From contig NIVC01003670.1 of the NCBI GenBank assembly GCA_002269645.1, forward strand, positions 1 to 64,000: a stretch of 64,000 bases of DNA, read 5' to 3'. Within the stretch, counting starts at the first letter, position 1, and the number at the start of each line of letters is the position of its first letter. The notes under the pieces were generated by a model. That model was not told the DNA's origin. It ran no database searches and worked only from the letters and a program-made list of their open reading frames with translations. Position numbers and translations under genes: made by a program. Origin of the DNA: Macrostomum lignano (Eukaryota). This document shows positions 1-55,274 of this stretch, piece after piece.

Positions 1-3000
1 CTGGAGGCTGCTGTTGAGCAGGCGGAATGGCACTAGCTAGTTCAGCGACAAGGCTTGAACCAGTGGCGTCTGTGCTTGCGGAGACCGCATTCAAGTTGGG
101 CTCAATCCGCGACGCGTCAGCGGAACTCTCGACTTCAGAAGCTGTGTGAAAGGAGTTGTGTAGTGTAGACACACTTCATGAACGTAATCATTGGCTGAGC
201 AAAGTTTCACAGATTCCCAAACTCAAACTCGAGCTACTTAGAAAGCTACTATTCTGTTTTGTTTATTTAGAGAGAGCTATGCTTTGCTGGCTCAACTACA
301 AGAACCATTTTCTAGTCACAGCCAGAGCCGCGCGTTAAAAATAACAGACTCCATGTCCCATTAAGTGCGTCCCAATAAATGCCTCAAACATCACATCCGC
401 ACAATGTTGTCCCAATAAGTGCCCAAGTGTATGTGTTTTTCTGTCCTGCCGATGCCCGCCCAAAATATCCATTGCCTTATTTGCCAAGGCTCCCAAACAC
501 TCCCGCTTAAAGTACATGTACCTTCATGCAGACAAAGCAATGCTCATGCAGTGCTCACCTTGAGCAGATCGCCGTTTCCTCTTAGCATTTGCACTTTCGC
601 TTGAATGACTTTCTGTAGCACCACTTGGGAGCTGACTAACTGTCTGGCTGAAGCCGGCTGGAGGCTGCTGTTGAGCAGGCGGAATGGCACTAGCTAGTTC
701 AGCGACAAGGCTTGAACCAGTGGCGTCTGTGCTTGCGGAGACCGCATTCAAGTTGGGCTCAATCGCGACGCGTCAGCGGAACTCTCGACTTCAGAAGCTG
801 TGTCAAAGGAGTTGTGTAGTGTAGACACACTTCATGAACGTAATCATTGGCTGAGCAAAGTTTCACAGATTCCCAAACTCAAACTCGAGCTACTTAGAAA
901 GCTACTATTCTGTTTTGTTTATTTAGAGAGAGCTATGCTTTGCTGGCTCAACTACAAGAACCATTTTCTAGTCACAGCCAGAGCCGCGTTAAAAATAACA
1001 GACTCCATGTCCCATTAAGTGCGTCCCAATAAATGCCTCAAACATCACATCCGCACAATGTTGTCCCAATAAGTGCCCAAGTGTATGTGTTTTTCTGTCC
1101 TGCCGATGCCCGCCCAAAATATCCATTGCCTTATTTGCCAAGGCTCCCAAACACTCCCGCTTAAAGTACATGTACCTTCATGCAGACAAAGCAATGCTCA
1201 TGCAGTGCTCACCTTGAGCAGATCGCCGTTTCCTCTTAGCATTTGCACTTTCGCTTGAATGACTTTCTGTAGCACCACTTGGGAGCTGACTAACTGTCTG
1301 GCTGAAGCCGGCTGGAGGCTGCTGTTGAGCAGGCGGAATGGCACTAGCTAGTTCAGCGACAAGGCTTGAACCAGTGGCGTCTGTGCTTGCGGAGACCGCA
1401 TTCAAGTTGGGCTCAATCCGCGACGCGTCAGCGGAACTCTCGACTTCAGAAGCTGTGTGAAAGGAGTTGTGTAGTGTAGACACACTTCATGAACGTAATC
1501 ATTGGCTGAGCAAAGTTTCACAGATTCCCAAACTCAAACTCGAGCTACTTAGAAAGCTACTATTCTGTTTTGTTTATTTAGAGAGAGCTATGCTTTGCTG
1601 GCTCAACTACAAGAACCATTTTCTAGTCACAGCCAGAGCCGCGTTAAAAATAACAGACTCCATGTCCCATTAAGTGCGTCCCAATAAATGCCTCAAACAT
1701 CACATCCGCACAATGTTGTCCCAATAAGTGCCCAAGTGTATGTGTTTTTCTGTCCTGCCGATGCCCGCCCAAAATATCCATTGCCTTATTTGCCAAGGCT
1801 CCCAAACACTCCGCTTAAAGTACATGTACCTTCATGCAGACAAAGCAATGCTCATGCAGTGCTCACCTTGAGCAGATCGCCGTTTCCTCTTAGCATTTGC
1901 ACTTTCGCTTGAATGACTTTCTGTAGCACCACTTGGGAGCTGACTAACTGTCTGGCTGAAGCCGGCTGGAGGCTGCTGTTGAGCAGGCGGAATGGCACTA
2001 GCTAGTTCAGCGACAAGGCTTGAACCAGTGGCGTCTGTGCTTGCGGAGACCGCATTCAAGTTGGGCTCAATCCGCGACGCGTCAGCGGAACTCTCGACTT
2101 CAGAAGCTGTGTCAAAGGAGTTGTGTAGTGTAGACACACTTCATGAACGTAATCATTGGCTGAGCAAAGTTTCACAGATTCCCAAACTCAAACTCGAGCT
2201 ACTTAGAAAGCTACTATTCTGTTTTGTTTATTTAGAGAGAGCTATGCTTTGCTGGCTCAACTACAAGAACCATTTTCTAGTCACAGCCAGAGCCGCGTTA
2301 AAAATAACAGACTCCATGTCCCATTAAGTGCGTCCCAATAAATGCCTCAAACATCACATCCGCACAATGTTGTCCCAATAAGTGCCCAAGTGTATGTGTT
2401 TTTCTGTCCTGCCGATGCCCGCCCAAAATATCCATTGCCTTATTTGCCAAGGCTCCCAAACACTCCCGCTTAAAGTACATGTACCTTCATGCAGACAAAG
2501 CAATGCTCATGCAGTGCTCACCTTGAGCAGATCGCCGTTTCCTCTTAGCATTTGCACTTTCGCTTGAATGACTTTCTGTAGCACCACTTGGGAGCTGACT
2601 AACTGTCTGGCTGAAGCCGGCTGGAGGCTGCTGTTGAGCAGGCGGAATGGCACTAGCTAGTTCAGCGACAAGGCTTGAACCAGTGGCGTCTGTGCTTGCG
2701 GAGACCGCATTCAAGTTGGGCTCAATCCGCGACGCGTCAGCGGAACTCTCGACTTCAGAAGCTGTGTGAAAGGAGTTGTGTAGTGTAGACACACTTCATG
2801 AACGTAATCATTGGCTGAGCAAAGTTTCACAGATTCCCAAACTCAAACTCGAGCTACTTAGAAAGCTACTATTCTGTTTTGTTTATTTAGAGAGAGCTAT
2901 GCTTTGCTGGCTCAACTACAAGAACCATTTTCTAGTCACAGCCAGAGCCGCGTTAAAAATAACAGACTCCATGTCCCATTAAGTGCGTCCCAATAAATGC

Positions 3001-5653
3001 CTCAAACATCACATCCGCACAATGTTGTCCCAATAAGTGCCCAAGTGTATGTGTTTTTCTGTCCTGCCGATGCCCGCCCAAAATATCCATTGCCTTATTT
3101 GCCAAGGCTCCCAAACACTCCCGCTTAAAGTACATGTACCTTCATGCAGACAAAGCAATGCTCATGCAGTGCTCACCTTGAGCAGATCGCCGTTTCCTCT
3201 TAGCATTTGCACTTTCGCTTGAATGACTTTCTGTAGCACCACTTGGGAGCTGACTAACTGTCTGGCTGAAGCCGGCTGGAGGCTGCTGTTGAGCAGGCGA
3301 ATGGCACTAGCTAGTTCAGCGACAAGGCTTGAACCAGTGGCGTCTGTGCTTGCGGAGACCGCATTCAAGTTGGGCTCAATCCGCGACGCGTCAGCGGAAC
3401 TCTCGACTTCAGAAGCTGTGTCAAAGGAGTTGTGTAGTGTAGACACACTTCATGAACGTAATCATTGGCTGAGCAAAGTTTCACAGATTCCCAAACTCAA
3501 ACTCGAGCTACTTAGAAAGCTACTATTCTGTTTTGTTTATTTAGAGAGAGCTATGCTTTGCTGGCTCAACTACAAGAACCATTTTCTAGTCACAGCCAGA
3601 GCCGCGTTAAAAATAACAGACTCCATGTCCCATTAAGTGCGTCCCAATAAATGCCTCAAACATCACATCCGCACAATGTTGTCCCAATAAGTGCCCAAGT
3701 GTATGTGTTTTTCTGTCCTGCCGATGCCCGCCCAAAATATCCATTGCCTTATTTGCCAAGGCTCCCAAACACTCCCGCTTAAAGTACATGTACCTTCATG
3801 CAGACAAAGCAATGCTCATGCAGTGCTCACCTTGAGCAGATCGCCGTTTCCTCTTAGCATTTGCACTTTCGCTTGAATGACTTTCTGTAGCACCACTTGG
3901 GAGCTGACTAACTGTCTGGCTGAAGCCGGCTGGAGGCTGCTGTTGAGCAGGCGGAATGGCACTAGCTAGTTCAGCGACAAGGCTTGAACCAGTGGCGTCT
4001 GTGCTTGCGGAGACCGCATTCAAGTTGGGCTCAATCCGCGACGCGTCAGCGGAACTCTCGACTTCAGAAGCTGTGTCAAAGGAGTTGTGTAGTGTAGACA
4101 CACTTCATGAACGTAATCATTGGCTGAGCAAAGTTTCACAGATTCCCAAACTCAAACTCGAGCTACTTAGAAAGCTACTATTCTGTTTTGTTTATTTAGA
4201 GAGAGCTATGCTTTGCTGGCTCAACTACAAGAACCATTTTCTAGTCACAGCCAGAGCCGCGTTAAAAATAACAGACTCCATGTCCCATTAAGTGCGTCCC
4301 AATAAATGCCTCAAACATCACATCCGCACAATGTTGTCCCAATAAGTGCCCAAGTGTATGTGTTTTTCTGTCCTGCCGATGCCCGCCCAAAATATCCATT
4401 GCCTTATTTGCCAAGGCTCCCAAACACTCCCGCTTAAAGTACATGTACCTTCATGCAGACAAAGCAATGCTCATGCAGTGCTCACCTTGAGCAGATCGCC
4501 GTTTCCTCTTAGCATTTGCACTTTCGCTTGAATGACTTTCTGTAGCACCACTTGGGAGCTGACTAACTGTCTGGCTGAAGCCGGCTGGAGGCTGCTGTTG
4601 AGCAGGCGGAATGGCACTAGCTAGTTCAGCGACAAGGCTTGAACCAGTGGCGTCTGTGCTTGCGGAGACCGCATTCAAGTTGGGCTCAATCTGCGACGCG
4701 TCAGCGGAACTCTCGACTTCAGAAGCTGTGTGAAAGGAGTTGTGTAGTGTAGACACACTTCATGAACGTAATCATTGGCTGAGCAAAGTTTCACAGATTC
4801 CCAAACTCAAACTCGAGCTACTTAGAAAGCTACTATTCTGTTTTGTTTATTTAGAGAGAGCTATGCTTTGCTGGCTCAACTACAAGAACCATTTTCTAGT
4901 CACAGCCAGAGCCGCGTTAAAAATAACAGACTCCATGTCCCATTAAGTGCGTCCCAATAAATGCCTCAAACATCACATCCGCACAATGTTGTCCCAATAA
5001 GTGCCCAAGTGTATGTGTTTTTCTGTCCTGCCGATGCCCGCCCAAAATATCCATTGCCTTATTTGCCAAGGCTCCCAAACACTCCCGCTTAAAGTACATG
5101 TACCTTCATGCAGACAAAGCAATGCTCATGCAGTGCTCACCTTGAGCAGATCGCCGTTTCCTCTTAGCATTTGCACTTTCGCTTGAATGACTTTCTGTAG
5201 CACCACTTGGGAGCTGACTAACTGTCTGGCTGAAGCCGGCTGGAGGCTGCTGTTGAGCAGGCGGAATGGCACTAGCTAGTTCAGCGACAAGGCTTGAACC
5301 AGTGGCGTCTGTGCTTGCGGAGACCGCATTCAAGTTGGGCTCAATCCGCGACGCGTCAGCGGAACTCTCGACTTCAGAAGCTGTGTGAAAGGAGTTGTGT
5401 AGTGTAGACACACTTCATGAACGTAATCATTGGCTGAGCAAAGTTTCACAGATTCCCAAACTCAAACTCGAGCTACTTAGAAAGCTACTATTCTGTTTTG
5501 TTTATTTAGAGAGAGCTATGCTTTGCTGGCTCAACTACAAGAACCATTTTCTAGTCACAGCCAGAGCCGCGTTAAAAATAACAGACTCCATGTCCCATTA
5601 AGTGCGTCCCAATAAATGCCTCAAACATCACATCCGCACAATGTTGTCCCAAT
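1..5653. repeat. Tandem array of a ~655-bp unit, about 8.6 copies visible, continuing off the left edge
   Basis: The same ORF set recurs every 654-657 bp and copies differ only by single substitutions or 1-2 nt indels. The array ends at gttgtcccaat (5653). Confidence 0.98.
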
Positions 5654-6612
5654 GATTGCTCCACATTTGAGCTTTGCTTGTATATACCAGTGCAATGTGT
5701 TTGTTTTTCTGTCCGACCGTTGCCACTAAAAATGTTTTTTTTGTGCTTTTCTTTTCTACGTTTGATGTGTAAATAATATGGTTAATATGTGCTTTTCTAT
5801 GTGAAATACAGTTTCTGCAGTCAAAGTACCTGCATTGGATCGATGTTTTTTAAGCTTGAAGATGCTGCGAAATTGCTTTTCTTCCATCTCTACAAAGTTT
5901 TAGTTTTCGCTTTCAAGGGAATTTCAAGGCTTTTACGGAGGTACATTTAAGATTTAGAGTATTATGTTTTTTCTTACCAATGTAGTATTTTTCAAACGCA
6001 CGGCCACTATATGAGACGTTTCGATTTGCTAATTGTTCCTCTATAAAATTGAAAATTGATTTAAGGGATCTCTTTTCACCTAAACATCATTGCTATTTTT
6101 TCGGGCATTGATAAGTAAGAAGTAAGATTGATAGTCTTTATGAGTATACTCTTCGTGGATAAGTAATTGAATGTTTAACATAGGCATACATACCTGTTAG
6201 AGTTGGTAGCCCTTTAGTAACGGCTTCAAACGGTAGTGGGTCTGCATCAATGTATCTGCAGTAAATTACATATTTGTGTTAATTTACGCAAAGTACAGTG
6301 TGCACGTAATTGTGTTATTTAGAAATCAATAAGACTAGTATAGGAAGATATAGTTTTTTTTAATGTCACTTACATGTTAGTCACCGTGCCGCTCCACTCC
6401 TTTCCCTTCCACTGCATCACGACTCGTGTTCCATGGCATAGTTGACCTTTAAACTTTAGGTCGCTTAGATATACAACGTTGGTCTGGCCGTAGGCGGGAT
6501 GCCTTTTATCAAATTTCACTTCCACTCTTCGGTTGGCATGGCCATTAACCTCTAGTGGCCTCTTTCTTACTTTTCTTTGGGCCTTCAGCTTCTTAGCGGC
6601 CTTCTGCCGCAT
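1..6612 (-). CDS. Uncharacterised multi-exon gene: basic N-terminus with a small beta-rich (Tudor/SH3-like?) module, then a tandemly repeated 80-aa S/A/P/Q-rich exon; 3' end lies outside the window
   Basis: Exons join in frame through GT-AG sites: 6612..6374 (MRQKAAKK..WKGKEWSGTVTN, donor AT|gtaagt, phase 2), 6255..6194 (ctgcag|..CAG|gtatgt), 5889..5830 (tttgtag|..CAG|gtac), then 240-nt phase-1/1 exons at 5380..5141, 4725..4486, 4070..3831, 3415..3177 (239 nt), 2761..2522, 2106..1867, 1452..1213, 797..559 (239 nt) and 141..<1. Each has cacag| and AAG|gtgagc. The domain label is an inference. Confidence 0.65.
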
Positions 6613-8049
6613 TGTTTTAAGTATGTAGCTACGAGTATTTTGACTAGATCAAATTCAGAATGGCTTATAGTAAATAGAATAGTATCGGGAAGTCAATGTA
6701 TTGTACAAAATTGTCTCAATCTAGATTTAGTTTGGTTCTTCCGATTGGCCTTTGAAAGAGGTTTGTGGGGGCTCTAAATAGGGGTGGCTTGGCTGTCCTA
6801 ACACTTCTGAATGTACACTCAATTGGCCTGGAGAGAAGGTTGATTGGGTTTTATTTGTGCGTGTCCCCACACTTCAGAATGTACACACGCGCGTTAGCTC
6901 GATTATCGATCGAAGCTGGGACAAAGTTCTTTACCAAGCTGTTTAGCCTGGCCAAAACGTTTTGTGAGAGAGGGATTGAGGCCTAGGGGCTTATTTTGCT
7001 CTGTAATCTCTCCGTAAGAAAAAGAATGCAAGAATTTTAATTGTGGTTGTTAAAATTTTAAGCTCTATATTAATATGCTCGCGAATCGCTGATAGGTGAA
7101 ATAGGGAGAAGAGTACGTTGGAACAATAGAAACAATACACCTGTAGTGGAGCGATAAAGTTACTAAGTGTTAGTAGTGTTGAACATTGTCCCAATTTTAG
7201 TATACTTCAGAGTTGAAAATTTTACAATTAGAATGTAGAATTTTATAGATTAGAGTGTATATGAGATAAACTAACAGTTCTTACAGCAAAACATCCTGGA
7301 AAACTTATGTAGCCACGACCACGCTGCCAAATGATATCTGATCTCTTCAGCTTTAGACAGGCTCCTTATTAAGCATTCAGCTTTACTTTAAGTAGACCTT
7401 TTAGAATATTACATGATAAAAAGACGAGACATGAAAGTATGATTAAAGTCCCAATTGTTCTATTGAACCAAAAATGGTTTTGCATGATTTTCCTAACCTG
7501 TTGGGACATTGTTAATCGCTAAATTACTCATGTATCGTAAGAAATATGGTTTCTGTTGTTTGGTTTCTGAAAAGGGAATCGAACGACGGTTCGAACGAAT
7601 ATTTTTTTAATTTAGTAGCCTTGATTTTTAGAAGTGTCGGGACGCACATATTGGGCCTGGCCCAACACATTTTTGGTCCTAATAGCACGGGTCAGTTTAT
7701 ACACGCTTGTCCCAAGAAATGCCTAATGCACAAACACACACACACACACCCCAGCAACAGAGAATATTTGCGCAGCAGGCGCGAAATGGCGGTGAAACAA
7801 TTGAGTTTAATCACGTCAAGGTCACTGCTTTATAGTCAAAGCGACCAACCGTTGACTGGCGGAAACTACAAAGTACGCTGGAATGGCAGTCCTCTCTATT
7901 GATTGATTTAGTCTCGAGCGCAGTTCGCCATACGGCAAGCATTAGTCGATTTGTCCCTGCTTTGCGTGCCAACTTAGCCTGACTGAAGGCTTATATGAAT
8001 ATTTTGTTATAATCCTCGCATGTTACTGACGGGGTATCTATCATTACGA

Positions 8050-9262: not shown

Positions 9263-14911
<5,649 letters not shown>

Positions 14912-15592
14912 TACCTACTGTATAAGGATCGAAGATGAATCGTTGGAAAATCGTCTGCTTTTATTCAGTACGAGAATTACAATTTCGATAAACATTATTG
15001 AACGAGACAATAAATTATTATTGCTACATGTATGCATTGCAATATAATCCACATATACTAAATGTCTAACTGTCTTTAAGGGTGGGGACCCCTTTGTTAT
15101 AGCACTTAGTTTCATCGTCATAGACTGGTAAAGCAGAAGATCTAGCGATCCCTACTTACATTTTATATGCTTGTATATGTTGTTGATTAATGATAAAATG
15201 GAATACTAGTAGTTGCGCTGGCAGTCGAGATAAATATAGATTATCAAAAATCATTTTTATTTATTAGAAATTACAAATTGTAATTAATAACAATGTTAAT
15301 ATATTAAACAATACTGCATATGAGAGTATACAGAAGTAATGAAATAAACGGTTTAAACTGAATTTTTACTGCACTGTGCATTGAAAAAGGTAAATGAGGT
15401 AAATCTTCTAAGGATGTTTTATTATCAATATTTTTCTATGCATCCAACAGAAGACGCAATAGAGATCTTTGCCTACTTTTACATGCTAAAATTAAAGCTT
15501 CAGGTTAATATGTAAGCTAGGCATACGATTGATTGCTTGTTGAAAAGTTAAAATTGAGAGAGTTGACGCTCCAGTGAGGAAGGATAAGGGGT

Positions 15593-16524
15593 AGTTTGGG
15601 TACAAGGAGTGAGGTGGGTGCAGGGAGCGAGGAGGGTGCAGGGAGTGAAGTGGGTACAGGGAGTGAAGTGGATTCAGGGAGCGAGGTGGGTGCAGGGAGT
15701 GAGGTGAGTGCAGGGAGTGAAGTGGGTGCAGGGAGCGAGGTGGGTGCAGGGAGTGAGGTAGGTGCAAATGGGTGCAGGGAGTGAGGTGGGTGCAGGGAGT
15801 GAAGTGGGTGCAGGGAGTGGGGTGGGTGCAGGGAGTGAGGTGGGTGCAGGGAGTGAGGTGGGTGCAAATGGGTGCAGGGAGTGAGGTGAGTGCAAATGGG
15901 TGCAGGGAGTGGGGTGGGTGCAGGGAGTGAGGTGGATGCAGGGAGTGAGGTGGGTGCAAATGGGTGCAGGGAGTTGGGTGGGTGCAGGGAGTGAGGTGGG
16001 TTCAGGGAGTGAGGTGGGTGCAGGGAGTGAGGTGGGTTCAGGGAGTGAGGTGGGTGCAGGGAGTGAGGTGGGTTCAGGGAGTGAGGTGGGTGCAGGGAGT
16101 GAGGTGGGTGCAAATGGGTGCAGGGAGTGAGGTGGGTGCAGGGAGTGAGGTGGGTTCAGGGAGTGAGGTGGGTTCAGGGAGTGAGGTGGGTTCAGGGAGT
16201 GAGGTGGGTGCAGGGAGTGAGGTGGGTGCAGGGAGTGAGGTGGGTGCAAATGGGTGCAGGGAGTGAGGTGGGTGCAGGGAGTGAGGTGGGTTCAGGGAGT
16301 GAGGTGGGTTCAGGGAGTGAGGTGGGTGCAGGGAGTGAGGTGGGTTCAGGGAGTGAGGTGGGTGCAGGGAGTGAGGTGGGTTCAGGGAGTGAGGTGGGTG
16401 CAGGGAGTGAGGTGGGTGCAAATGGGTGCAGGGAGTGAGGTGGGTGCAGGGAGTGAGGTGGGTTCAGGGAGTGAGGTGGGTTCAGGGAGTGAGGTGGGTG
16501 CAAATGGGTGCAGGGAGTGAGGTC
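15593..16524 (-). repeat. Inverted copy of the same 18-bp minisatellite
   Basis: (GGGAGTGAGGTGGGTGCA)n on +, with added GCAAATGGGT variant units. Confidence 0.95.
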
Positions 16525-21963: not shown

Positions 21964-22719
21964 TCAGTACACGCTGAACTTGACCCAGTCGGCGCTCGTC
22001 TCGATCTCCGCCTCCACCTGAGCGTCGGTGAACAGCAGCAGGCGGCAGGTTTTCAGCTTGCTGTTGTACAGCACGTGTCTGCAGTAACTTCTGGAGTTCA
22101 TAGCAGCCGCCATGCACTCGAGTGAGTTGGCCACCTGCAGCAGGTCAGTGCGGCAGTAATCCGTGCTGGGGTTGGAGCTGGTGCGCTTGAACGGAGTTCG
22201 CTTCCACGAGGCTGAGGCGAGAGGCTGAGGCGGAGCTGCATCTGCTACGAACTCGCAGACGAATCCAGCCAGAACGGAGCAATCAAAGTCAACAAGCTTT
22301 CCATAGTGGGCGCTATACTGAGCAATGCAGTTTTCTTTTCTATTACCGTTTGGATCACCGCCATACCATAGCGAGTCATTGTCAGGCAGCAGGCTTTTGC
22401 CGTTGACCAGCTGCCAGCCCGACTTGCTTGTGTTTCTCTCATCGGCCAGGTCAGCCACTCCCAGCCAGATGTTGCAGTGGCAGTTCAGTCTCAGAATGCT
22501 GCCCAGCAGCTGCAGTGAGCTGTACGAGTTGAGCAGCTCGCCTCCCATTGATGCACACTGACGATTTGCTGAGCACCAGCTGTGGCTCTGAGCTGTGCTC
22601 ACGAACAAGCATCTGCCGGCCTCGAGGCTGAACGGAGCTGGGCACGGCTGAGCCCACACTGTCAGCAGACTGCTGAGCAGACTGGTCAATGTTAAAAATT
22701 TTTGAATTCTGAAATCCAT
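21964..22719 (-). CDS. Secreted C-type lectin domain plus degenerate PAN/apple-like domain protein, 251 aa, intronless
   Basis: Hydrophobic N-terminus ending in VWA-Q. CTLD motifs CP..F....C, W..A...C..MGGEL, WLGV, W..GDPNG..ENC and D.DC....FVCE. C-terminal C..C...Y.....C.L pattern. Confidence 0.85.
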   Translation of the reverse strand: MDFRIQKFLTLTSLLSSLLTVWAQPCPAPFSLEAGRCLFVSTAQSHSWCSANRQCASMGGELLNSYSSLQLLGSILRLNCHCNIWLGVADLADERNTSKSGWQLVNGKSLLPDNDSLWYGGDPNGNRKENCIAQYSAHYGKLVDFDCSVLAGFVCEFVADAAPPQPLASASWKRTPFKRTSSNPSTDYCRTDLLQVANSLECMAAAMNSRSYCRHVLYNSKLKTCRLLLFTDAQVEAEIETSADWVKFSVY

Positions 22720-23745
22720 TAGCGATTCAACCGGTTGATTTTACATTTGGTTTTCGAATCGTTTTCTATAACAAAGATTTTTCACAGCTTCATAGTCTGT
22801 GTAAATAGCTTTCTCAGCAGGCAATATAGCTGGTTTTTGGCTGTTTATTCTGTGATCAGAACCGTGTTAATACGTTAATACGGAATTAAGTCAACACGAG
22901 TTCTGTCGTATTTGGCTTAACACCTGCTTAATGCATTCTCAAATATTCTCCAAAGCTTCTCCAAGCAGCTGATTGCGATGCCAGAGAGCTGTCCTACCAT
23001 GGAGTCCTATAAAGTGTGCACCTGGAGCGGAAGGTAATAATTTTAATTTTGCCCGCAATGCATTTTTTCTGCAGCGCATTGCCTCCCCAATGCTTAGTAA
23101 TTAAATCTTAATTAAAGAGATTTACACGATCAACACGGTTTGATAGTAACTTAATTTCAACCAAACAAAATGGTGACTAGTTTTGGCCCAAAGATAGAGG
23201 ACGGGTGGATCGATAAGAAAAATAAGTAAGCAGTCAAGTGATGACATTTGTACATAGGGTAAATGTACATCGGTAAGCGACTGAGGAATAATGGCCCAAC
23301 CAAGCAATTGCCATTGTTTCTGGGTGAAATGTAAATGTTCAGTTAAAGTGGCCAGAAAAATCGAGCGCAATACAACACAGTCTACCATTGTAAATTATGA
23401 ATTTTCATCGATCGAAAGTAACGTAAATTTGTCTTAATTACACAGCTTCGCTTCCTTTTCAGACTCTTTATTGAGAAATCCATGTACATGAAGATGTAGC
23501 TTAACATCCCGTAAATGGATAATTCCAAATTGTCCAGGACAAATAAAAACCTGTTGACAATTATGGATAACTGACAGACGTATTTGGTCAACAAAATCCA
23601 TTTATGCCATGCTTTTACGTCTCGTTTGCATTATATGTTGGTAAATAGTACCATCCCTGACAATTAGAAAGTTAAATGGCCGCTGTACGATCGAAGGTGG
23701 TCAGGAGTCAGTGGAATGGGAAAATTTTCCCCAGTGCTGCTTTCC

Positions 23746-24772
23746 TCAGCTGCAAGGCCTGCACAAACACAGCCGAATTGAAGGCAGCCCCACTTCAGCC
23801 GACTGAGCTGCCGCAGGGGCCGTGGCTAGAGCTGGGCCTAGACTTCCTGGGACCGATCAGAGGCCACATGCTGCTGGTGTGCACCGACTATTTTTCACGT
23901 TTCTCACTGGTACAGACGATGTCGGGGTCGACAGCGGCAGCTCCGGTCATCCGAACCCTCCGCCAGTGGTTCAGCACGTTCGGCCAGCCAGTCAAGATCA
24001 CCACCGACAACGGCCCGCCATTCTCGTCCGCAGAATTCAACGCCTTCCTGCGCAGCCAGGGCGTCCACCACCATCGGACTACGCCGCTGCATCCCCAAGC
24101 CAACGGACTCGTAGAGCGATGCAACCGAGGCCTCAATAAGGCAATCAGAGCGGCGATCCTGGAAGGCAGTGACTGGCAGGCGGCACTGGACGACTACCTG
24201 GCTGCATACCGGCGAACACCGCACGCAGCAACCGGCATGGCCCCAGCCGACCTGCTATTCAGCCGACAGCTCAATGACACGATCCCCAGCTTGCGCCACT
24301 CCCGGCCGGTTGACGCCAGGCGACAGACCGTCCGCGGCCACGACTCCAGGGAAAGGAGCGGATGAAGGCCTTCGCCGACAGCAAGAGGGGCGCCACCGAC
24401 CACCAGATCACCGTAGGCGACCTCGTACTCCGCCGGCTCACCAACCGTAGCAAGACCGACCCCTTCTTCGAGGCCTCGCCATGGACCGTGACAGAAGTCC
24501 GCGGCAACACCCTGCAGCTCCAACGGGCCGGCCAGAGGTGCTCCAGGCACACCACCCACGTCAAGCGAGTCTCCCAGGCAGCCGACAAGTGGCCGGGTGA
24601 CCCCGGAGAACGCGACAGCGGACAGGACAGCCGGCCGGATGAACCAACCCAACCGCCCGAGCCAACCGGCGACCAGGACGTCCCGCTCGCCAACAGGCCG
24701 CACCCCCGACAGGCCAAGGAGACGCCGAAACGCTACGAAGAGGGCGACCGGCGAAAGGCTCTGGACATCTGA
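23746..24772 (+). pseudogene. 5'-truncated Ty3/Gypsy pol: integrase core and GPY/F-like C-terminus, with a frameshift near 24360
   Basis: CKAC..PW..LGLDF.GP, DYFSRF, TDNGPPF.S.EF..F and P.HPQANG.VER motifs. The C-terminal part continues in another frame (MKAFAD..VGDLVL). Confidence 0.88.
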
Positions 24773-25837: not shown

Positions 25838-40758
<14,921 letters not shown>

Positions 40759-43310: not shown

Positions 43311-43749
43311 GACAAAAATGCCACTGAGAATTTGCAGAATTACTGAGTTACAAAATTAACCGTAAAATCAAAGTCCAAGCAAAAGAATCTATGTTTAGGT
43401 GACCAACAAGAATCACAAGTGAAAGCTTTTGCTCAGCAATATATTTGTTTATGCTTTCGCAAAGCAAAAATAAGAGTAACTTGGATTGCGATCAACAATC
43501 AATATGTGCATTAAAAACCAATTATAAGCTGATGGCTTGAATGACACAGAACAGCGATGGGTGCAATGCTATTTTTTTGTCACAAGTACACGAGGGTTAA
43601 ATGTAGGCACAACAGGCTTTCAGACAGAACAGAATAACTTATTTGCGAGTAAAACAGGTTCGCTGTGAGGATATTGACACAGATTTTGTATACATTTATT
43701 TGTCTCGCATAGTCATTTGAGAATGCCATTTGAGAAGCTAAAGTGAGGC

Positions 43750-44725
43750 AGGACCAGCAACTGAGAATCTGGGACGCTAGTGACCCAGTAACTGAGGATC
43801 TGGGAGGCTGGCCCAGCAACTGACACTCTGGGAGGCTGGCCCAGCAACTGAGGATCTGGGAGGCTGGCCCAGCAACTGAGGATCTGGGAGGCTGGCCCAG
43901 CAACTGAGGATCTGGGAGGCTGGCCCAGCAACTGACACTCTGGGAGGCTGGCCCAGCAACTGAGGATCTGGGAGGCTGGCCCAGCAACTGAGGATCTGGG
44001 AGGCTGGCCCAGCAACTGAGGATCTGGGAGGCTGGCCCAGCAACTGAGGATCTGGGAGGCTGGCCCAGCAACTGACACTCTGGGAGGCTGGCCCAGCAAC
44101 TGAGGATCTGGGAGGCTGGCCCAGCAACTGAGGATCTGGGAGGCTGGCCCAGCAACTGAGGATCTGGGAGGCTGGCCCAGCAACTGACACTCTGGGAGGC
44201 TGGCCCAGCAACTGACACTCTGGGAGGCTGGCCCAGCAACTGAGGATCTGGGAGGCTGGCCCAGCAACTGAGGATCTGGGAGGCTGGCCCAGCAACTGAC
44301 ACTCTGGGAGGCTGGCCCAGCAACTGACACTCTGGGAGGCTGGCCCAGCAACTGAGGATCTGGGAGGCTGGCCCAGCAACTGAGGATCTGGGAGGCTGGC
44401 CCAGCAACTGAGGATCTGGGAGGCTGGCCCAGCAACTGACACTCTGGGAGGCTGGCCCAGCAACTGAGGATCTGGGAGGCTGGCCCAGCAACTGACACTC
44501 TGGGAGGCTGGCCCAGCAACTGAGGATCTGGGAGGCTGGCCCAGCAACTGAGGATCTGGGAGGCTGGCCCAGCAACTGAGGATCTGGGAGGCTGGCCCAG
44601 CACCTGAGGATCTGGGAGGCTGGCCCAGCACCTGAGGATCTGGGAGGCTGGCCCAGCAACTGAGGATCTGGGAGGCTGGCCCAGCACCTGAGGATCTGGG
44701 AGGCTGGCCCAGGACCTGAGGATCT
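43750..44725. repeat. 28-bp minisatellite (CTGGGAGGCTGGCCCAGCAACTGAGGAT)n with GACACT variant units
   Basis: Read directly. The ORFs cycle every 28 aa (3 units). Confidence 0.97.
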
Positions 44726-45305
44726 GGCAGTGTAAACTCAAAAAATTCTTTTAATCAATAGACTAATCAATAGATTAGGCAAAAGTTAGTCAGAGCGCAT
44801 TCAGGCAGAAAAACAGCTGTTTCATAGTAAAGCTGCAAAGCTATACAAAGCAAAAATAATACAGTTTCTGTTTTCCAACACGAAGAAAAACAACGCTTAG
44901 AAGAGATTACACAGCAAGCTGAAATAAAGCGAGATGCGAAAAAACGGCAAAACAGAATAGAGGTCTGTTAAAGTTTAAAAAACCATTGGCTCAACTCTTA
45001 ATTAGAGATTGACACATTGTGACAGACAACAAATCTATAAGCATCAACGGCTATTGTTTATTGTATGCTTGTATAAAAAGTTCAGAAAATTTATAATTTA
45101 GTAAATTAATATGCATTGCTCTCGAGATACTACTTATAAGCGTTCACGTCGAATAGTAGGAAGGAAGGACATTTAAAAAAGCAAATTTATCAATATTCAT
45201 TTTTATAGATTTCGGATCCAAATTTCGAATTCGTTGTTGCACTGCAGACTACTATGAGTAGGGTAGAGTACATGCAATGAGATAGATAGCAAAGGAAGTT
45301 AGAAA

Positions 45306-48384: not shown

Positions 48385-48540
48385 GGGGGTTGTAGCCTAG
48401 TGGTTGGAGTATTAGACTTGCAACTTGAAGGTCAGGGGTTCAATTCCCAATCCCATTGGGATTGTCTTATTTAAGCAAGACACTTAACTCTATATTGCTT
48501 TATTTTACCTAGCCATAAATGGGTATCAGTATTAGCTGGG
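48385..48540 (+). mobile_element. tRNA-derived SINE, family B
   Basis: A box TAGCCTAGTGG and B box GGTTCAATTCC, then AGCAAGACACTTAAC and AATGGGTA motifs typical of conserved-core SINE bodies. Confidence 0.7.
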
Positions 48541-50003: not shown

Positions 50004-53000
50004 CTGGCTGGCTATGCCATCCACTTGGAGGCCTACTACCTTGAGCTTTAAATAAAATACTTTTGTTTAAGTTGCAAAGACATATAGCCAAGACAAAGGG
50101 TGAATGGAGAGATATACTAATAGGCTTTGTCTAATTCTGGCACCCTAGCTAGAGGCGACTTTTTAAAAAAGAGTTTTTTTATAAAAAAAGCTAAAAATTA
50201 AAATAAATAGCTCAACTTGCAATTTGCCAAATTAAGTACTTATCCAGTACCTAATGCAGCCTTTCCTAAAAGTCAGTGTTGGGCACCAGTCCATTAATAA
50301 GCATTAATCCATTAATAAGCATTAATAAGCATTAAAATTTTTCATTAACGTTAATGGACTGTCGTTAAGATTTTTTTGAACTAATGGACTAACGAATTTG
50401 CATTAAAAATTTTGTGAATTAACAATAAATTCATAGTTAATGGTAGTGTTATATCAATGACCAAAGATGCAAAGAAGGAACGAAAAATAGAAGTCTTACA
50501 AGAAGTTTAAACATTACAAACATATTTGAGCTTACCTATATATATGCCTAAATATAATCTCTTTTATTATGACGATGATCATACAGACGTACATGTAATT
50601 AACAACTTCTTACAAATAAACTTTAAAATAATGAATTAAAATAGTGTGAAACTTTATTTCTTGCGCGTGAGCATCAATTGCTTTGATTCACTTCTGTCCC
50701 AATCTTTCGCAACTTTCTGCTGCGCCTGCTAATGGTACTGAAACAACCTTCCTATGTGTATTTAATTATGAATTTTTTCATTATTAGCTTTTAAGTTTCA
50801 AATAAAATAAGTTACTTTTTTACCATATGCTTTACTTTTAGTAGTATTATGCATGCAAGTTTTTAAAATGATTATTTATTAAACTTTTAGCTTTCAAATC
50901 GCTTAGATGACTTCTATGTTTCGCTAAAAAGATGGAATAGCAAAGACGTGCATTACGAAGTCTGTTTTGGAAAAAATGTGCAAGATTTCCATATTTTCTA
51001 TGTTAACTTTAACGGATTAATGCTTATTAACGATTATCAGTGAAATTTCAGTTAACTTAACAAAATTAGGAGTTAAAAAGTTAAGATTTTTTTGTTTCAA
51101 TGCTAACGCTTTTGCTATTAATGGAAGTTAAGATTTTCATTAAGGCAGTTGGTTTTTGTCCGGTGACCGGACAAATAGCGACATGGTTATTTGTCCGGTT
51201 ACTGGACAAATAGCCATTTTATATAATAAAATTATTTATTTAGAAAAGATAAATTATCCATAGAATAGATAATTATTTAGAATAATATGTTATTATACTA
51301 GTGTCCAGTTGGCTCCTTTATAGTTACGATTTAGCAATTCATTGGAACGCTTTTACCTATTGGAATGCTGAATTTCAAACTAAAGGTCACACTTCTCTAA
51401 TAAATAAAAGCCAATGAACCAAAGTTTATTGTGCATATTAAAGTTAAGACTTGCATCTATTTTTTTTCCATATGGGGCACAATTATACTGCGCCAATACA
51501 GAGCAATTCTCTAGCCCCCTTCCAGCCACCCTTTAGCTGCCCTAAAGCCAACTTTCACTGCCAGATTTTCATAGAAACAGCATTGACCATGTGAAACATG
51601 TTTTGGGGCAATCAATTAAGAGAATATGTGAATCATTTTTATAAAAATTACACCTGGGGCACTCATTTAAAATTTTGGTGTGGCTGGAAGGTAGCAACGG
51701 ACATGTCAGTCCTGCAAGCTAAATTTTAAGTGAAACTAATTGCGCGTGTAGTTCATGTACACTAGTATAACAGGGTCCATGAGAAATGCCCGCAGACAAA
51801 TTGCCCGCCGAGATTTGCCCGCAGGAGATTTGCCCGCAGAGATTTGCCCGCTGAGCTTTTCCTGCCGAGATTTGCCCGCAGTGCAATTTGCCCGCAGTGC
51901 AATTTGCCCGCAGGAGATTTGCCCGCAGGGGGTTTGCCCGCCGAGCTTTTCCCGCCGTAATTTGCCCGCAATGCAATCTGCCCGCAAGTGAATTGCCCGC
52001 CGAGATTTGCCCGCCGAGATTTGCCCGCGGTGATTTGCCCGCGGAGATTTGCCCGCGGAGATTTGCCCGCGGAGATTTGCCCGCGGAGATTTGCCCGCGA
52101 GCGAATTGCCCGCCGAGATTTGCCCGCGGAGATTTCCGCAATGCCTTTTCCTTTAGTGTTGCACTTACTCGTACATGTAGCCTTGCGAGTAGCGACAGAT
52201 TTGCCTGCATTGCGTTTTGTCAACACCCAATGCTAAGTAATGTCATTTTTAATAAAAATATTTAGCCAATCAAATTGCTCCTGTAGTATAGATGTAACTG
52301 TATTTCAAATTTCTCTATGCAGATTTTTCTTGTGGGAGAAGTTTTCATTTCTATAGCGGCACATCAGTGAGCCACATATATTCTATATAGCTAATGCCCC
52401 CCTAGACTAGAGCATGCTCGATGCAATTTTTGGTGCTGCAGTTGAGATTTTTTCGTGGGAAATGAAAAAACTAAAAAACTAAAATTTCTTTTGCAACAAC
52501 TTTTCCACAATTGTGTCTTGTCAATGGAGGAAAGAATAAATTGGAGTGCTAATCTGAGCCAGTTATTTTTATCTCGCTCGATCTTTACTTCTAACATCCC
52601 TTCCCCCCGTTCCTTCCTATTGGCTGAAAGCATATTTTGATGCGAGCTCATACTATGCTGGGACAGACCTTTCAGAGGGGAACGAAAGCGAAAATGAGCC
52701 AAAAAATACTTTGTCTATGGCAGTCACGAGCCAATGTATGTAGCATACATGTATTAGCTATAATAGTAAAAATGTAGTGAGAAAAGACAGAATACAGTAG
52801 AGCTGCTGCTAATTGGGACAAAACAAACATTTTCTACGCAAAATTGTAACTATTATTTAAACAAAGTAACCGTCGAATTAAGTGAAATTTTTATAACATG
52901 CAAAAATGACAAGGAGATTTATCATTTAATTAATTTAGTAGTTTATCATACATTTGTAAGTAGCTTTACTTAATGATAAATCTCCTTAAGTTACAGTACA

Positions 53001-53306
53001 TGTAGTTGAAATTAAGGCTGCTATTGAAAATATAAGTGTATTATTGCATTTATATAGATGATAGAGGAAATAAGACAGTAGTAGACAGTGGATATTATCA
53101 GATATATATATATATATATATATATAAAACACAATTTATAATCAAGTGTCAACAATGGGCCAAGGAAAAAAACAATCGCATCATGTGCATGTAAGCCATA
53201 TAGGTCAAAGTCAACTTAAAATGAATGAATAATAAAACCAATTAAACAGGCAGTAGTCATAGATATGCCGATATGGTATTTCGATTTTAGTTTAACTTCT
53301 ACCATA

Positions 53307-53480
53307 CAGTGGCGCAGCCAGGGGGCCTGTCTCCCTCCCCTCGAAATTTACCCCCCCCCCAATTCCGGAGAAAAAATTGCTGCTCCCCCTGAAATTCTGG
53401 AGAAAAAACCCCGCCCTCCTATACCCCCTCCTCCGGGTGTTGAATGCCCCCCCACAAAAAAATTTCTGGCTGCGCCACTG
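53307..53480. mobile_element. hAT MITE, 174 bp, innermost insertion
   Basis: Perfect 15-bp TIR CAGTGGCGCAGCCAG and perfect 8-bp TSD CTACCATA (53299..53306, 53481..53488). Confidence 0.92.
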
Positions 53481-53834
53481 CTACCATAACTCTTCTCACT
53501 TCTTATTTGCCTCAGAATGAATAGGGAATAGAAATAGACACAATGACTTAAAATGAAATTTCAATTTTAAAAACTTGAACTTCTACTTTCATCATTCTAA
53601 TTTATGTTCCGCTGGGATTTTGTGATTTGAATCTTAGGGCACCAACACTAAAAGTTGTTTCCAGTTTCCATATACGGTTTCTGTAAAATCTCAAGCATTA
53701 AAATTGGAGTCCTGATAGGGTATAACAAACTAAGTTAAATTCATTTTGCAACTTAGTAAAATGTAAACTAAACATCTAATATATATAGTCAGAATTGGAA
53801 ACTGTACGTCCAATTCAATTACAATCGTTGCAAC

Positions 53835-55274
53835 TCACTTCTTCAAATGATGAGCGATGCCCCTTAGAAATGAATGCAAAGGGAAGTTCGCGGGCAGACC
53901 TCCACCTTCAGCATTCCAGCGTTGCGTGACTTCAAGAACCATATTGTCGTTCTGGGCGTACTTTGTCTTCTTCTTAGGAGTTTCACCGGCAGCAGCTCTG
54001 GCAATCAATAGTGACTGATGGTCGACTTCTTTCTTGAGTTCGTTGATAAGCCGAAACAAATTCGGATTGCTGCAGCCCAGAATTGACTGAAGCCTTCTGT
54101 GCCAGGCTTCAACGGAGTTGTTGGTGGGATGCAGTCCATTCAGGGTTCGCTCACGAACGTTCCAGATTGAAGGCGCGAATCGTGGCTGCCGTCTTCTTCC
54201 ATTAGGCAGCCTCCGACCAATCCACTGTGCCTCGAAGTAGTCAGCAGTCGAAATCATGGCCTCAGGGAAGTCGGGAAGCATTATCAACTGATCAAACGCA
54301 GCAGGAACGCTATTGAGAGGAACAAACGCCAGTGCTGAAAGGGAGCGAAGCCAGAGTGACATTTCGCCATCCTCTTCTTCAAGTTGGCCTTTTAACCCTT
54401 CAGCAACCGCCCTTCTATAAACGCACTGAATAAGGTGAAATAGACAGCCTGTTGGCTCAACGCTAAAGACCTGCTGAACTGCGTTCATATTAGCTCGCTC
54501 AAAATCTGACATCCAGCGAAGTGGTCTAATATTTGGCGCTAATTGAAGGATAGCCTCGTAAAGTCGACAATAAGTTGCCTCATTCTTGTTGGGTAGTAAA
54601 GCATAGATGAGGGGCCTCACGAAGCGTTGAATTTCAGCATGGACTGTCACTAGCTGAGCGAAAAGTGGTGGTGAAGCGTCAAATGTGCCATCGGAAAAAA
54701 AGTCGGTAGCTCCTTGCAAAGCATGGAGGCTTTCTTCACTACCAAATAATAAAATTCGGTTGTTGTTTTGTCCAGAGTCGTAAAGCAAAAATGGTGCACC
54801 ATTATGCAGACGAAACTCATCTGGTATAATGAGCTCGGCAAGGGTGGCCGGCTGTACTGGGAGACCCTGGTGGGTCTGTCGAACGTCTTGAACTAGCCGC
54901 TTTAGAGTACTCTGAGTTGGAAGGGCTATGCCAGCAGATTCAGATAACCCATTAGTGTGCTCTGTAACTATATTCGCAGTCAAATTGAAGGTGTTTCTGG
55001 CATCCGACTTTATCATCCTAATTGCTTCCAAAACTTGGAACCGAGAACCATCTGGTCCGTGATTGTGCACGTTCAACTGTCGAATTTTAAGACCATTTCG
55101 GATGTGAATTCGGGCCGGACAGGATCCTAGACGCCGCTCTTCGCACTGCCAGAAGCTTACTTCTATATCGACCGCGCTGGCTCGTTCGAATGTATAATAA
55201 TATCCTTCGCATGCTGCTTTACGTTTGCCACGATTTGTTGCACTAAATCGCACAGCGATCGGAGGAGCTTCCAT
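53835..55274 (-). CDS. MULE transposase with FLYWCH zinc finger (479 aa from the ATG at 55274)
   Basis: GYYY..FWQC..CPARI..HNH (FLYWCH), DGTF, YALLPNK, SDFE, GCLFHLIQ and TNNSVEAWH. The ORF is uninterrupted and all D-D-E motifs are present. Confidence 0.93.
   Translation of the reverse strand: MEAPPIAVRFSATNRGKRKAACEGYYYTFERASAVDIEVSFWQCEERRLGSCPARIHIRNGLKIRQLNVHNHGPDGSRFQVLEAIRMIKSDARNTFNLTANIVTEHTNGLSESAGIALPTQSTLKRLVQDVRQTHQGLPVQPATLAELIIPDEFRLHNGAPFLLYDSGQNNNRILLFGSEESLHALQGATDFFSDGTFDASPPLFAQLVTVHAEIQRFVRPLIYALLPNKNEATYCRLYEAILQLAPNIRPLRWMSDFERANMNAVQQVFSVEPTGCLFHLIQCVYRRAVAEGLKGQLEEEDGEMSLWLRSLSALAFVPLNSVPAAFDQLIMLPDFPEAMISTADYFEAQWIGRRLPNGRRRQPRFAPSIWNVRERTLNGLHPTNNSVEAWHRRLQSILGCSNPNLFRLINELKKEVDHQSLLIARAAAGETPKKKTKYAQNDNMVLEVTQRWNAEGGGLPANFPLHSFLRGIAHHLKK

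What the first reader, a model, noticed from the sequence alone, without database searches (positions are those of the whole stretch)
1..6612. The 655-bp 'satellite' is a tandem array of a symmetric coding exon
Seen: each unit holds a 240-nt segment bounded on the minus strand by ttt(c/g)acacag| and AAG|gtgagc. It is phase 1 at both ends and stop-free, encoding 80 aa (ASEVESS..PPAQQQPP..NAKRKRRSAQ). Three unique upstream exons (6612..6374, 6255..6194, 5889..5830) splice into it with matching phases 2-1-1. Inference: the gene can make a protein with at least 9 disordered modules, each ending in an NLS-like KRKRR. Because the exons are symmetric, any number can be skipped, giving length-tunable isoforms or copy-number alleles.
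Basis: partly seen in the sequence, partly recalled or inferred. Interest (0 to 1): 0.8.

Follow-up and report, generated by a model that had tools for sequence, protein, structure and literature searches.

The report
Tandemly repeated exon in flatworm gene
A 655-bp tandem repeat at the start of this window (Macrostomum lignano flatworm DNA) carries in every unit an exon-like 240-nt piece. It sits just downstream of a small gene already modelled in public databases, so it is probably a recently amplified coding exon, an ordinary kind of gene architecture, but no RNA evidence could be checked.

Summary
The array is real. There are 8 complete units and 1 cut unit of 654-656 bp, about 99.8% identical, and the array runs off the window start. 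Each unit holds a minus-strand segment with a strong acceptor and donor. Such a pair is absent from the other 57 kb and arose in 1 of 3000 shuffled units.

Only 6 of the 8 complete copies are 240 nt and open. Copies 4 and 8 are 239 nt and break the frame. A stop-free frame of this length is not unusual by itself.

Exon 1 and exon 2 match three Macrostomum lignano UniProt models. One model has the same ATG and the same exon 1-exon 2 junction. Two models stop at the exon 2 donor without a stop codon, in phase 1, and phase 1 is the phase that opens the repeat exon.

No transcript, homolog or selection evidence for the repeat exon could be obtained.

Best reading: a lineage-restricted gene with a basic tail and an SH3/Tudor-like barrel, extended by tandem duplication of an exon-plus-intron segment, as in SmPoMuc exon 2 or LPA KIV-2. 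Length-tunable isoforms remain speculation.

The parts
6613..7185 (-). 5' flank and putative promoter / 5' UTR of the gene. It holds no ATG over 574 nt, CCAAT boxes at 6847, 6826 and 6748, TATTTAG at 6780, and a direct repeat GTGTACATTC... at 6886 and 6818.
   Evidence: Only 8 of 20000 shuffles of this stretch lack an ATG. Promoter function is inferred from motifs only.
6374..6612 (-). Exon 1 (239 nt). It starts at ATG 6612 with A at -3 and ends at donor CAT|GTAAGT. It encodes a basic tail (MRQKAAKKLKAQRKVRKRP) and a predicted four-strand SH3/Tudor-like barrel. An alternative donor ACG|GTGACT follows 6385.
   Evidence: It is identical to M. lignano UniProt models P0004, P0001 and P0002. AlphaFold2 core pLDDT is about 80. 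The top Foldseek hits are Tudor and Sac7d at E 0.14-0.4.
6194..6255 (-). Exon 2 (62 nt). Acceptor is ...TTTACTGCAG| and donor is CAG|GTATGT. It ends in intron phase 1.
   Evidence: The junction VTN|IYIDADPLPFEAVTKGLPTLT is present in P0004 and P0002, and both models end here without a stop.
5978..6040 (-). Acceptor is TTTCAATTTTATAG| and donor is TTG|GTAAGA.
   Evidence: It is the best-scoring in-phase AG..GT pair between exon 2 and the array (8.1 / 7.5), and it is open in phase 1. No external evidence.
5830..5889 (-). It is in phase and open, but its sites are weak.
   Evidence: acceptor 2.9, donor 5.1. No external evidence.
1..5653 (-). Tandem array of a 654-656-bp unit: the last 273 nt of an intron, a 240-nt exon and the first 142 nt of the next intron. 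There are 8.6 units, cut by the window start. A degenerate edge extends to about 5724.
5141..5380 (-). Module exon copy 1 (240 nt, open, phase 1-1).
4486..4725 (-). Module exon copy 2 (240 nt, open). It carries one G>A change at a CpG, giving R>Q.
3831..4070 (-). Module exon copy 3 (240 nt, open). Its acceptor is the G variant.
3177..3415 (-). Module exon copy 4 (239 nt). A 1-nt deletion (CC>C) shifts the frame.
2522..2761 (-). Module exon copy 5 (240 nt, open).
1867..2106 (-). Module exon copy 6 (240 nt, open).
1213..1452 (-). Module exon copy 7 (240 nt, open).
559..797 (-). Module exon copy 8 (239 nt). A 1-nt deletion (GG>G) shifts the frame.
1..141 (-). Module exon copy 9. Only the first 141 nt are in the window, and they are open.

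Best explanation
The window is Macrostomum lignano DNA (free-living flatworm). On the minus strand a small, lineage-restricted gene starts at ATG 6612.

Shown:
- Exons 1 and 2 encode a very basic N-terminal tail and a small beta-barrel. Public models contain both exons.

Inferred:
- The reading frame continues in intron phase 1, optionally through one or two short symmetric exons (6040..5978 and 5889..5830), into a 240-nt phase 1-1 exon.
- That exon, with 273 nt of upstream intron and 142 nt of downstream intron, was amplified by tandem duplication and unequal crossing-over into an array of at least 9 nearly identical 655-bp units.
- If the copies are spliced in series, the product is a basic tail and SH3/Tudor-like barrel followed by n copies of an 80-aa module. 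The module is Ser/Ala-rich and acidic, and probably disordered. Each copy ends in KRKRR.
- Such a protein would most likely be nuclear and multivalent, binding nucleic acid or chromatin.
- The array is young or continuously homogenised, so selection on the module cannot be read from it.
- Two of the eight complete copies are frame-broken in this assembly. These are assembly indel errors, recent decay, or copies that must be skipped.
For: - Array anatomy and near-identity, introns included.
- The array edge falls inside the intron, and the edge copy is degenerate, as expected for unequal crossing-over.
- Splice-like sites are far beyond chance.
- Exons 1 and 2, the ATG and their junction are identical to M. 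lignano UniProt models. Two of these lack a stop and end at the exon 2 donor.
- Exon 2 ends in phase 1, the one phase of three in which the module is open.
- Between exon 2 and the array, only two candidate exons pass the site thresholds and are open. Both are symmetric.
- A 574-nt ATG-free stretch lies upstream of the start codon (8 of 20000 shuffles).
- The exon 1 fold prediction has four strands and core pLDDT about 80. Its nearest structures are Tudor domains and Sac7d/Sso7d.
- Intron sizes are plausible for a species with mean intron length 1.1-1.4 kb. Transcripts overlapping repeats were filtered from the GenBank annotation, which could explain the lack of a full model: PMC5730564.
- Precedent in another flatworm: SmPoMuc exon 2 lies in roughly 1-kb genomic repeats, up to about 20 copies, with introns over 94% identical: PMC2576457.
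Against: - No transcript, EST, peptide or homolog contains the module. Two word-indexed protein searches found nothing, although that index also missed the identical M. lignano proteins.
- Two of 8 copies are frameshifted. Indels are no rarer in the exon (2 in 240 nt) than in the intron (2 in 415 nt), so there is no sign of coding constraint.
- The only exonic substitution is nonsynonymous.
- A stop-free 80-codon frame is expected by chance, and the antisense strand is open for 114 codons.
- One public model (P0001) ends after 78 aa through an alternative donor.
- The 3' end of the gene is outside the window.
- The fold assignment rests on single-sequence models with Foldseek E above 0.1. Pfam and the PDB sequence search gave nothing.
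Confidence: 0.58

Rival explanations
1. The gene is short and the array is non-coding. Exons 1 and 2 make a small protein, such as the 78-aa A0A1I8HCD9 form or an exon 2 read-through form. The 655-bp array would then be one of the many tandem repeats of this genome lying downstream. At most it is transcribed as a 3' UTR, as an NMD substrate or as a non-coding spliced RNA. Its exon-like look would be a relic of one ancestral exon copied along with its surroundings.
For: - P0001 ends TIH* through the alternative donor at 6385.
- Read-through of the exon 2 donor ends after 18 more codons.
- Two of 8 copies are frame-broken and there is no excess of exon conservation.
- 15% of the genome is simple or tandem repeat (PMC5730564).
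- No protein containing the module was found.
- Every inter-module intron holds an AATAAA.
Against: - Two public models are open-ended at the exon 2 donor and need downstream coding exons.
- The main donor (9.1) is stronger than the alternative one (6.05).
- The module has top-percentile splice sites, is open in exactly the phase exon 2 delivers, and has the right strand and position.
Confidence: 0.27
2. The modules are coding, but the product is a secreted polyprotein. KRKRR would be a furin/Kex2-type site (R-X-K/R-R) that releases about 75-aa acidic peptides, as in multi-copy peptide precursors.
For: RKRR|S fits the proprotein-convertase consensus (established knowledge). Identical modules in series are typical of such precursors (sequence).
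Against: The N-terminus from ATG 6612 is strongly basic, has no hydrophobic signal-peptide core, and is followed by a barrel domain. No upstream ATG exists for 574 nt that could supply another N-terminus.
Confidence: 0.03
3. The array as shown is largely an assembly product. The copy number and the single-base differences would then reflect long-read consensus errors or collapse/expansion of a repeat, so counts of 'intact' and 'broken' modules are unreliable.
For: - All four length differences are run-length changes of short repeats: CC>C, GG>G, GGG>GG and CGCG>CGCGCG.
- Indels outnumber substitution sites 4 to 2, the reverse of normal variation.
- The species is a hidden polyploid with a hard-to-assemble, repeat-rich genome (PMC5730564; PMC10468722 abstract).
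Against: The unit structure is consistent across nine copies. A shared C/G polymorphism recurs in four or five copies each, and the unique-to-repeat junction is clean. This rival concerns numbers, not the existence of the array, and it is compatible with the best explanation.
Confidence: 0.1

Closest known systems
SmPoMuc polymorphic mucin genes of Schistosoma mansoni (exon 2 genomic repeats)
   Same: It is also a flatworm gene. One exon with its flanking intron is repeated in tandem as a roughly 1-kb genomic unit, up to about 20 copies. Introns are highly homogenised, and the repeat region was hard to assemble (PMC2576457). The exon is symmetric, so copy number sets the number of protein repeats.
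   Different: The SmPoMuc exon is 27 bp and encodes a secreted, glycosylated mucin repeat. Its units are separated by microsatellites, and transcripts and copy-number variation are documented. Here the exon is 240 nt, the protein has no signal peptide, there is no sequence similarity, and there is no expression evidence.
Human LPA kringle IV type 2 repeat
   Same: It is an intragenic tandem array of exon-plus-intron units with very little sequence variation between copies. Copy number determines protein length (PMC4378929 and PMC11515395 abstracts).
   Different: The KIV-2 unit is 5.5 kb with two exons that encode a folded kringle domain of a secreted protein. Here the unit is 655 bp with one exon that encodes a low-complexity module. 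Copy-number polymorphism was not tested.
Tandem duplication of phase 1-1 symmetric exons (exon-shuffling modules; titin PEVK, spider silk Flag-type exon-intron repeats)
   Same: A symmetric phase 1-1 exon was duplicated in tandem, so any number of copies keeps the frame. Concerted evolution homogenises introns and exons together. The spider silk case is cited in PMC2576457; titin PEVK is from my own knowledge.
   Different: Those cases have transcript evidence, and some have proven differential inclusion. Here inclusion is only inferred.
Schistosoma micro-exon genes (MEGs)
   Same: This is a flatworm precedent for protein variation by skipping symmetric exons (bioRxiv 10.1101/2023.06.21.545858 abstract).
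   Different: MEG exons are 3-81 bp, they are not tandem copies of one unit, and the proteins are secreted. The present gene is not a member.
Tudor / Sac7d-type SH3-like barrels
   Same: The predicted four-strand barrel of exons 1-2 superposes best on the ARID4B, RBBP1 and KDM4A Tudor domains and on Sac7d/Sso7d. It is preceded by a basic tail, as in nucleic-acid or chromatin binders.
   Different: Foldseek E is 0.14-0.4. There is no Pfam or PDB sequence match, and an aromatic cage was not examined. This is a resemblance of fold only.

Membership tests
Intragenic exon-plus-intron tandem repeat (coding macrosatellite / VNTR of the LPA KIV-2 or SmPoMuc type) | Head-to-tail genomic units, each holding a complete exon with both splice sites plus intron sequence | tested here: met
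   There are nine units of 654-656 bp. Each has an acceptor (7.2-9.0) and a donor (10.8). The array edge lies inside the intron.
Intragenic exon-plus-intron tandem repeat (coding macrosatellite / VNTR of the LPA KIV-2 or SmPoMuc type) | Exon length is a multiple of three, with the same intron phase on both sides, and the exon is open in that phase | tested here: inconclusive
   This holds in 6 of 8 complete copies. Copies 4 and 8 are 239 nt. Real mutation and assembly error cannot be told apart.
Intragenic exon-plus-intron tandem repeat (coding macrosatellite / VNTR of the LPA KIV-2 or SmPoMuc type) | The array lies inside a transcribed protein-coding gene, in frame with its unique exons | tested here: inconclusive
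   The upstream exons 1-2 match public gene models that are open-ended in phase 1. The downstream end of the gene is outside the window, and there is no RNA evidence.
Intragenic exon-plus-intron tandem repeat (coding macrosatellite / VNTR of the LPA KIV-2 or SmPoMuc type) | Repeat exons are spliced to each other in mature mRNA | not testable with these tools
   No M. lignano transcript data were reachable. Protein searches were negative but blind to this species' entries. Exact-sequence contig look-ups found nothing.
Intragenic exon-plus-intron tandem repeat (coding macrosatellite / VNTR of the LPA KIV-2 or SmPoMuc type) | Copy number varies between alleles or individuals | not testable with these tools
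   Only one assembly of the locus is available.
Non-coding satellite DNA | Long homogeneous arrays, usually at many loci or in heterochromatin, with no contribution to mature mRNA | tested here: inconclusive
   The array is at least 5.65 kb and cut by the window edge. There is no other copy in the remaining 58 kb. Genome-wide copy number is unknown. The strong splice-site pair argues against a featureless satellite.
Intron-hosted small-RNA repeat cluster (SNORD116-like) | Each unit's intron encodes a structured small RNA | tested here: not met
   There was no Rfam match at E up to 5 in 4000-7000. The intron fold z-score is 0.08.
Ribosomal protein L24 / KOW and DUF3553 (names attached to the UniProt entries) | Significant match to the family profile | tested here: not met
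   The Pfam scan at E up to 10 lists neither KOW nor DUF3553. The best hits are E 0.07-0.2 to unrelated families.
Tudor-type SH3-like barrel | A barrel of four to five antiparallel strands that superposes on solved Tudor domains with significant scores | tested here: inconclusive
   Single-sequence AlphaFold2 models have mean pLDDT 66-71 and four strands. The top Foldseek hits are ARID4B, RBBP1 and KDM4A Tudor with TM 0.43-0.50 and E 0.14-0.6.
Classical monopartite nuclear localisation signal | K-(K/R)-X-(K/R) basic cluster in an accessible region | tested here: met
   KRKRR is present in every intact module, and KVRKRP is in the N-terminal tail. Only the pattern is shown. Import was not tested.
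Proprotein-convertase-processed polyprotein | N-terminal signal peptide that brings the R-X-K/R-R sites into the secretory pathway | tested here: not met
   The N-terminus is basic and hydrophilic (pI 10.3 for the unique part). There is no hydrophobic core, and no alternative upstream ATG.

The most novel reading that the evidence does not exclude
A species-restricted nuclear 'accordion' protein. It would consist of one SH3/Tudor-like reader domain followed by a variable number of identical acidic, NLS-tipped 80-aa modules. The number of modules would be set both by copy number of a 655-bp macrosatellite and by skipping of individual symmetric exons. Skipping would include obligatory skipping of the frame-broken copies and weaker inclusion of the G-variant acceptors. 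The valency of a chromatin or RNA-binding scaffold would then differ between individuals and tissues.
Probability: 0.15. Interest if true: 0.55.

Novelty: new member of a known kind. Interest (0 to 1): 0.35.

Why it matters
If the module exons are spliced in series, this would be a clean, very young example of a gene body being built by macrosatellite expansion. It lies in an experimentally tractable flatworm, where transgenesis and RNAi exist (PMC5730564). Such a locus could be used to watch how copy number, concerted evolution and exon inclusion shape a repetitive disordered protein.

It also flags an annotation blind spot. Pipelines that discard transcripts overlapping tandem repeats, as was done for the GenBank submission of Mlig_3_7, will miss genes of this kind in a genome that is 15% tandem repeat.

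If the array is not expressed, it is simply one more tandem repeat next to a small orphan gene.

Tried and rejected
- Pfam on the unique N-terminal 120 aa and on the module gave nothing significant.
- A PDB sequence search found nothing.
- Two word-indexed searches of 5.8 billion proteins found nothing: the unique part plus one module, and exon 3 plus two modules. These negatives are weak. The same index missed the 100%-identical M. lignano UniRef entries that the exhaustive HMMER search found with exon 1.
- Exact-sequence contig look-ups found nothing on record. They covered the lectin ORF, P0001, P0002 and the exon 1 ORF.
- A metagenome DNA scan for a 31-nt exonic word gave no match.
- I considered an intron-hosted ncRNA cluster and rejected it. 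There were no Rfam hits and no excess folding.
- I considered the antisense 114-codon open stretch. It depends on the C/G polymorphism, has no start context or splice frame, and is the usual antisense shadow of an open frame.
- P0002 joins 1921 aa of cadherin repeats to exon 1 through a weak internal acceptor. None of the cadherin part is in this window. I treat the join as a chimeric or paralogous model, not as evidence that exon 1 is internal.
- P0003 (rodent repeat protein, E 1e-4 over four repeated stretches) is treated as spurious.
- dN/dS or exon-versus-intron conservation cannot be computed. Only six columns vary among the units.
Full report
**What is in the sequence.**
- The first 5.65 kb of the window is a head-to-tail array of a 654-656-bp unit. 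There are eight complete units and a ninth cut by the window start.
- Aligned on the minus strand, the units differ at only six columns:
  - one G>A change at a CpG (R>Q in copy 2);
  - three 1-nt deletions;
  - one CG insertion;
  - a C/G polymorphism eight bases before the acceptor, which splits the copies about evenly.
- In six of the eight complete copies the segment is 240 nt. It is open in the frame entered with one carried base (intron phase 1 on both sides) and gives ASEVESS...PPAQQQPP...NAKRKRRSAQ.
- Copies 4 (3415..3177) and 8 (797..559) are 239 nt and shift the frame. With all copies included, the conceptual product stops at residue 457. With those two copies left out, it is open to the window edge.

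**Is it more than chance?**
- The open frame is not. Eighty stop-free codons are common at this composition, and the plus strand of the same units has open stretches of 114-137 codons.
- The pair of splice sites is. I scored sites with a generic metazoan position weight matrix that I wrote from textbook consensus frequencies. The donor scores 10.8 and the acceptor 9.0 (7.2 for the G variant).
- No other open AG..GT segment of 200-400 nt reaches acceptor 7.2 and donor 9.0 anywhere in the other 57 kb on either strand. Only 1 of 3000 shuffled units produced one.

**Whose DNA, and is there a gene?**
- An exhaustive HMMER search with the translation of exon 1 returned two strong matches, at 99 and 100% identity. 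A 99-aa protein shares the first match's 90% cluster. All three are Macrostomum lignano UniProt entries:
It ends at the last full codons of exon 2 without a stop.
  - A0A1I8J8U0 (2018 aa) is a cadherin-repeat model whose last 97 residues are exon 1 (from residue 4) plus exon 2. It also ends at the exon 2 donor.
  - A0A1I8HCD9 (78 aa) uses an alternative donor 11 nt upstream (ACG|GTGACT, score 6.05 against 9.11). It therefore reads TIH-stop in exon 2.
- None of the cadherin part of A0A1I8J8U0 is in this window, so that join is chimeric or comes from another copy of the locus.
- The start codon is preceded by an in-frame stop 12 codons upstream.
- More tellingly, 574 nt upstream of it hold no ATG in any frame. 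Only 8 of 20000 shuffles match this. The other long ATG-free gaps in the window are minisatellite arrays.
- Three CCAAT boxes and a TATTTAG lie 135-235 nt upstream.
- Exons 1 and 2 are therefore well supported as the start of a real gene.

**The link between the gene and the array.**
- Two public models are open-ended at the exon 2 donor, so coding exons must follow.
- Exon 2 ends in phase 1, the one phase of three in which the module is open. Exon 2 could join the module directly.
- In the 813 nt between exon 2 and the first module, only five AG..GT pairs pass modest thresholds. Only two of these are open in phase 1, and both are symmetric:
- The array's 5' edge lies inside the intron. Identity to the inter-module intron is perfect from 5653 to 5381, degenerate with a 31-nt indel back to about 5724, and absent further upstream.
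- So the amplified segment is 273 nt of intron, the exon, and 142 nt of the next intron. The more diverged edge copy is the usual signature of unequal crossing-over.

**What the protein would be.**
- The unique part is very basic (pI 10.3). The module is acidic (pI 5.2), 40% Ser plus Ala, and ends in KRKRR.
- Single-sequence AlphaFold2 models of exon 1 and of exons 1-2 give a four-strand sheet with core pLDDT of about 80 (mean 71 and 66).
- Their nearest solved structures are the ARID4B, RBBP1 and KDM4A Tudor domains and Sac7d/Sso7d. Scores are weak: E 0.14-0.6 and TM 0.43-0.50.
- Pfam and the PDB sequence search gave nothing. The names on the UniProt entries ('50S ribosomal protein L24', 'DUF3553') were not reproduced.
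- A basic tail, an SH3-like barrel and repeated basic clusters, with no signal peptide, point to a nuclear protein that binds nucleic acid or chromatin. This is inference.
- The furin-site reading of RKRR|S is unlikely without a signal peptide.

**What could not be shown.**
- No transcript or protein containing the module was found. The two word-indexed searches are weak negatives, because they also missed the identical M. lignano entries.
- Exact-sequence contig look-ups and a metagenome DNA scan were empty.
- With six variable columns there is no power to test purifying selection. What little there is does not favour it: two of four indels fall in the exon, and the only exonic substitution is nonsynonymous.
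- All four indels are run-length changes of short repeats, and indels outnumber substitutions. That pattern fits long-read consensus error as well as real slippage.
- The Mlig_3_7 GenBank annotation excluded transcripts overlapping repeat annotations (PMC5730564). A full model of this gene would have been filtered out.

**Alternatives examined.**
- An intron-hosted small-RNA cluster is not supported. There was no Rfam match at E up to 5, and the intron fold z-score is 0.08.
- A short-gene reading remains a serious rival. It would use the 78-aa form, or exon 2 read-through, which ends after 18 more codons.
- Each inter-module intron has an AATAAA, and read-through of a module donor ends after 11 codons (…SAQGEHCMSIALSA-stop). 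Any unit could therefore serve as a terminal exon.

**Comparison with what is known.**
- Tandem arrays of exon-plus-intron units inside genes are an established architecture.
- The closest parallel is in another flatworm. Exon 2 of the Schistosoma mansoni SmPoMuc genes lies in roughly 1-kb genomic repeats, up to about 20 copies. Their introns are over 94% identical and the region resists assembly (PMC2576457). That paper also cites spider-silk exon-intron repeats under concerted evolution.
- Human LPA KIV-2 (5.5-kb units) is the textbook case of copy number setting protein length.
- Schistosome micro-exon genes show isoform variation by skipping symmetric exons.
- The present locus shares the architecture but no sequence with any of them, and it lacks the expression and polymorphism evidence they have.

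**Verdict.**
Exons 1-2 are supported and the module is plausible. Exon 3 is weak, and a better candidate exon was missed.
- The functional ideas are untested.
- This is most likely a new member of a known kind, of moderate interest.

Noticed in passing
window 51770-56443: An ORF with FLYWCH zinc-finger and MULE transposase domains (53835-55301, minus strand) is flanked by terminal inverted repeats of about 675 nt (51770-52444 and 55799-56443, 95-99% complementary). Each repeat contains a 14-nt minisatellite (TTGCCCGCGGAGAT). It looks like a young, possibly intact Mutator-like DNA transposon.
   Followed up: partly
window 10715-16502: An ORF with EF-hand domains (Pfam) on the plus strand runs straight into a 3.4-kb array of an 18-nt minisatellite (11239-14686, 192 copies, 92% matches). 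The reverse complement of the same 18-mer forms a second array at 15597-16502.
   Followed up: no
window 7218-49567 (whole window): Minisatellite density is extreme. More than fifteen separate arrays with units of 14-56 nt are each 0.3-3.4 kb long, for example the 48-mer array at 31837-35175, the 21-mer at 27338-28771 and the 28-mer at 43745-44727. This fits the reported 15% simple and tandem repeat content of M. lignano (PMC5730564).
   Followed up: no
window 6748-6886, minus strand: Upstream of exon 1 there are three CCAAT boxes (6847, 6826, 6748), a TATTTAG (6780) and a direct repeat of about 28 nt starting GTGTACATTC at 6886 and 6818. This is a promoter-like arrangement.
   Followed up: partly
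window 5506, 4851, 4196, 3541, 2887, 2232, 1578, 923, 267 (minus strand): Every intron in the array, including the one before the first module, contains an AATAAA hexamer. Read-through of the module donor stops after 11 codons. Each unit could therefore act as an alternative terminal exon.
   Followed up: no
window 6385: An alternative donor ACG|GTGACT lies 11 nt upstream of the main exon 1 donor. The public 78-aa model A0A1I8HCD9 uses it, which shifts the frame to an early stop in exon 2.
   Followed up: partly
window 21964-22719, 23676-24365, 30724-31500, 48386-48455: Other recognisable features:
- a single-ORF C-type lectin with a weak PAN match (minus strand);
- a retroelement integrase-core fragment (plus strand);
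- a 258-codon exon of a xanthine dehydrogenase / aldehyde oxidase-type molybdopterin enzyme (minus strand);
- one tRNA gene (plus strand).
Sources.
   Followed up: no
tool behaviour: The word-indexed protein search did not return M. lignano UniRef entries that are 100% identical to part of the query. The exhaustive HMMER search found them. Negative results from the word-indexed search for this species should not be relied on.
   Followed up: partly
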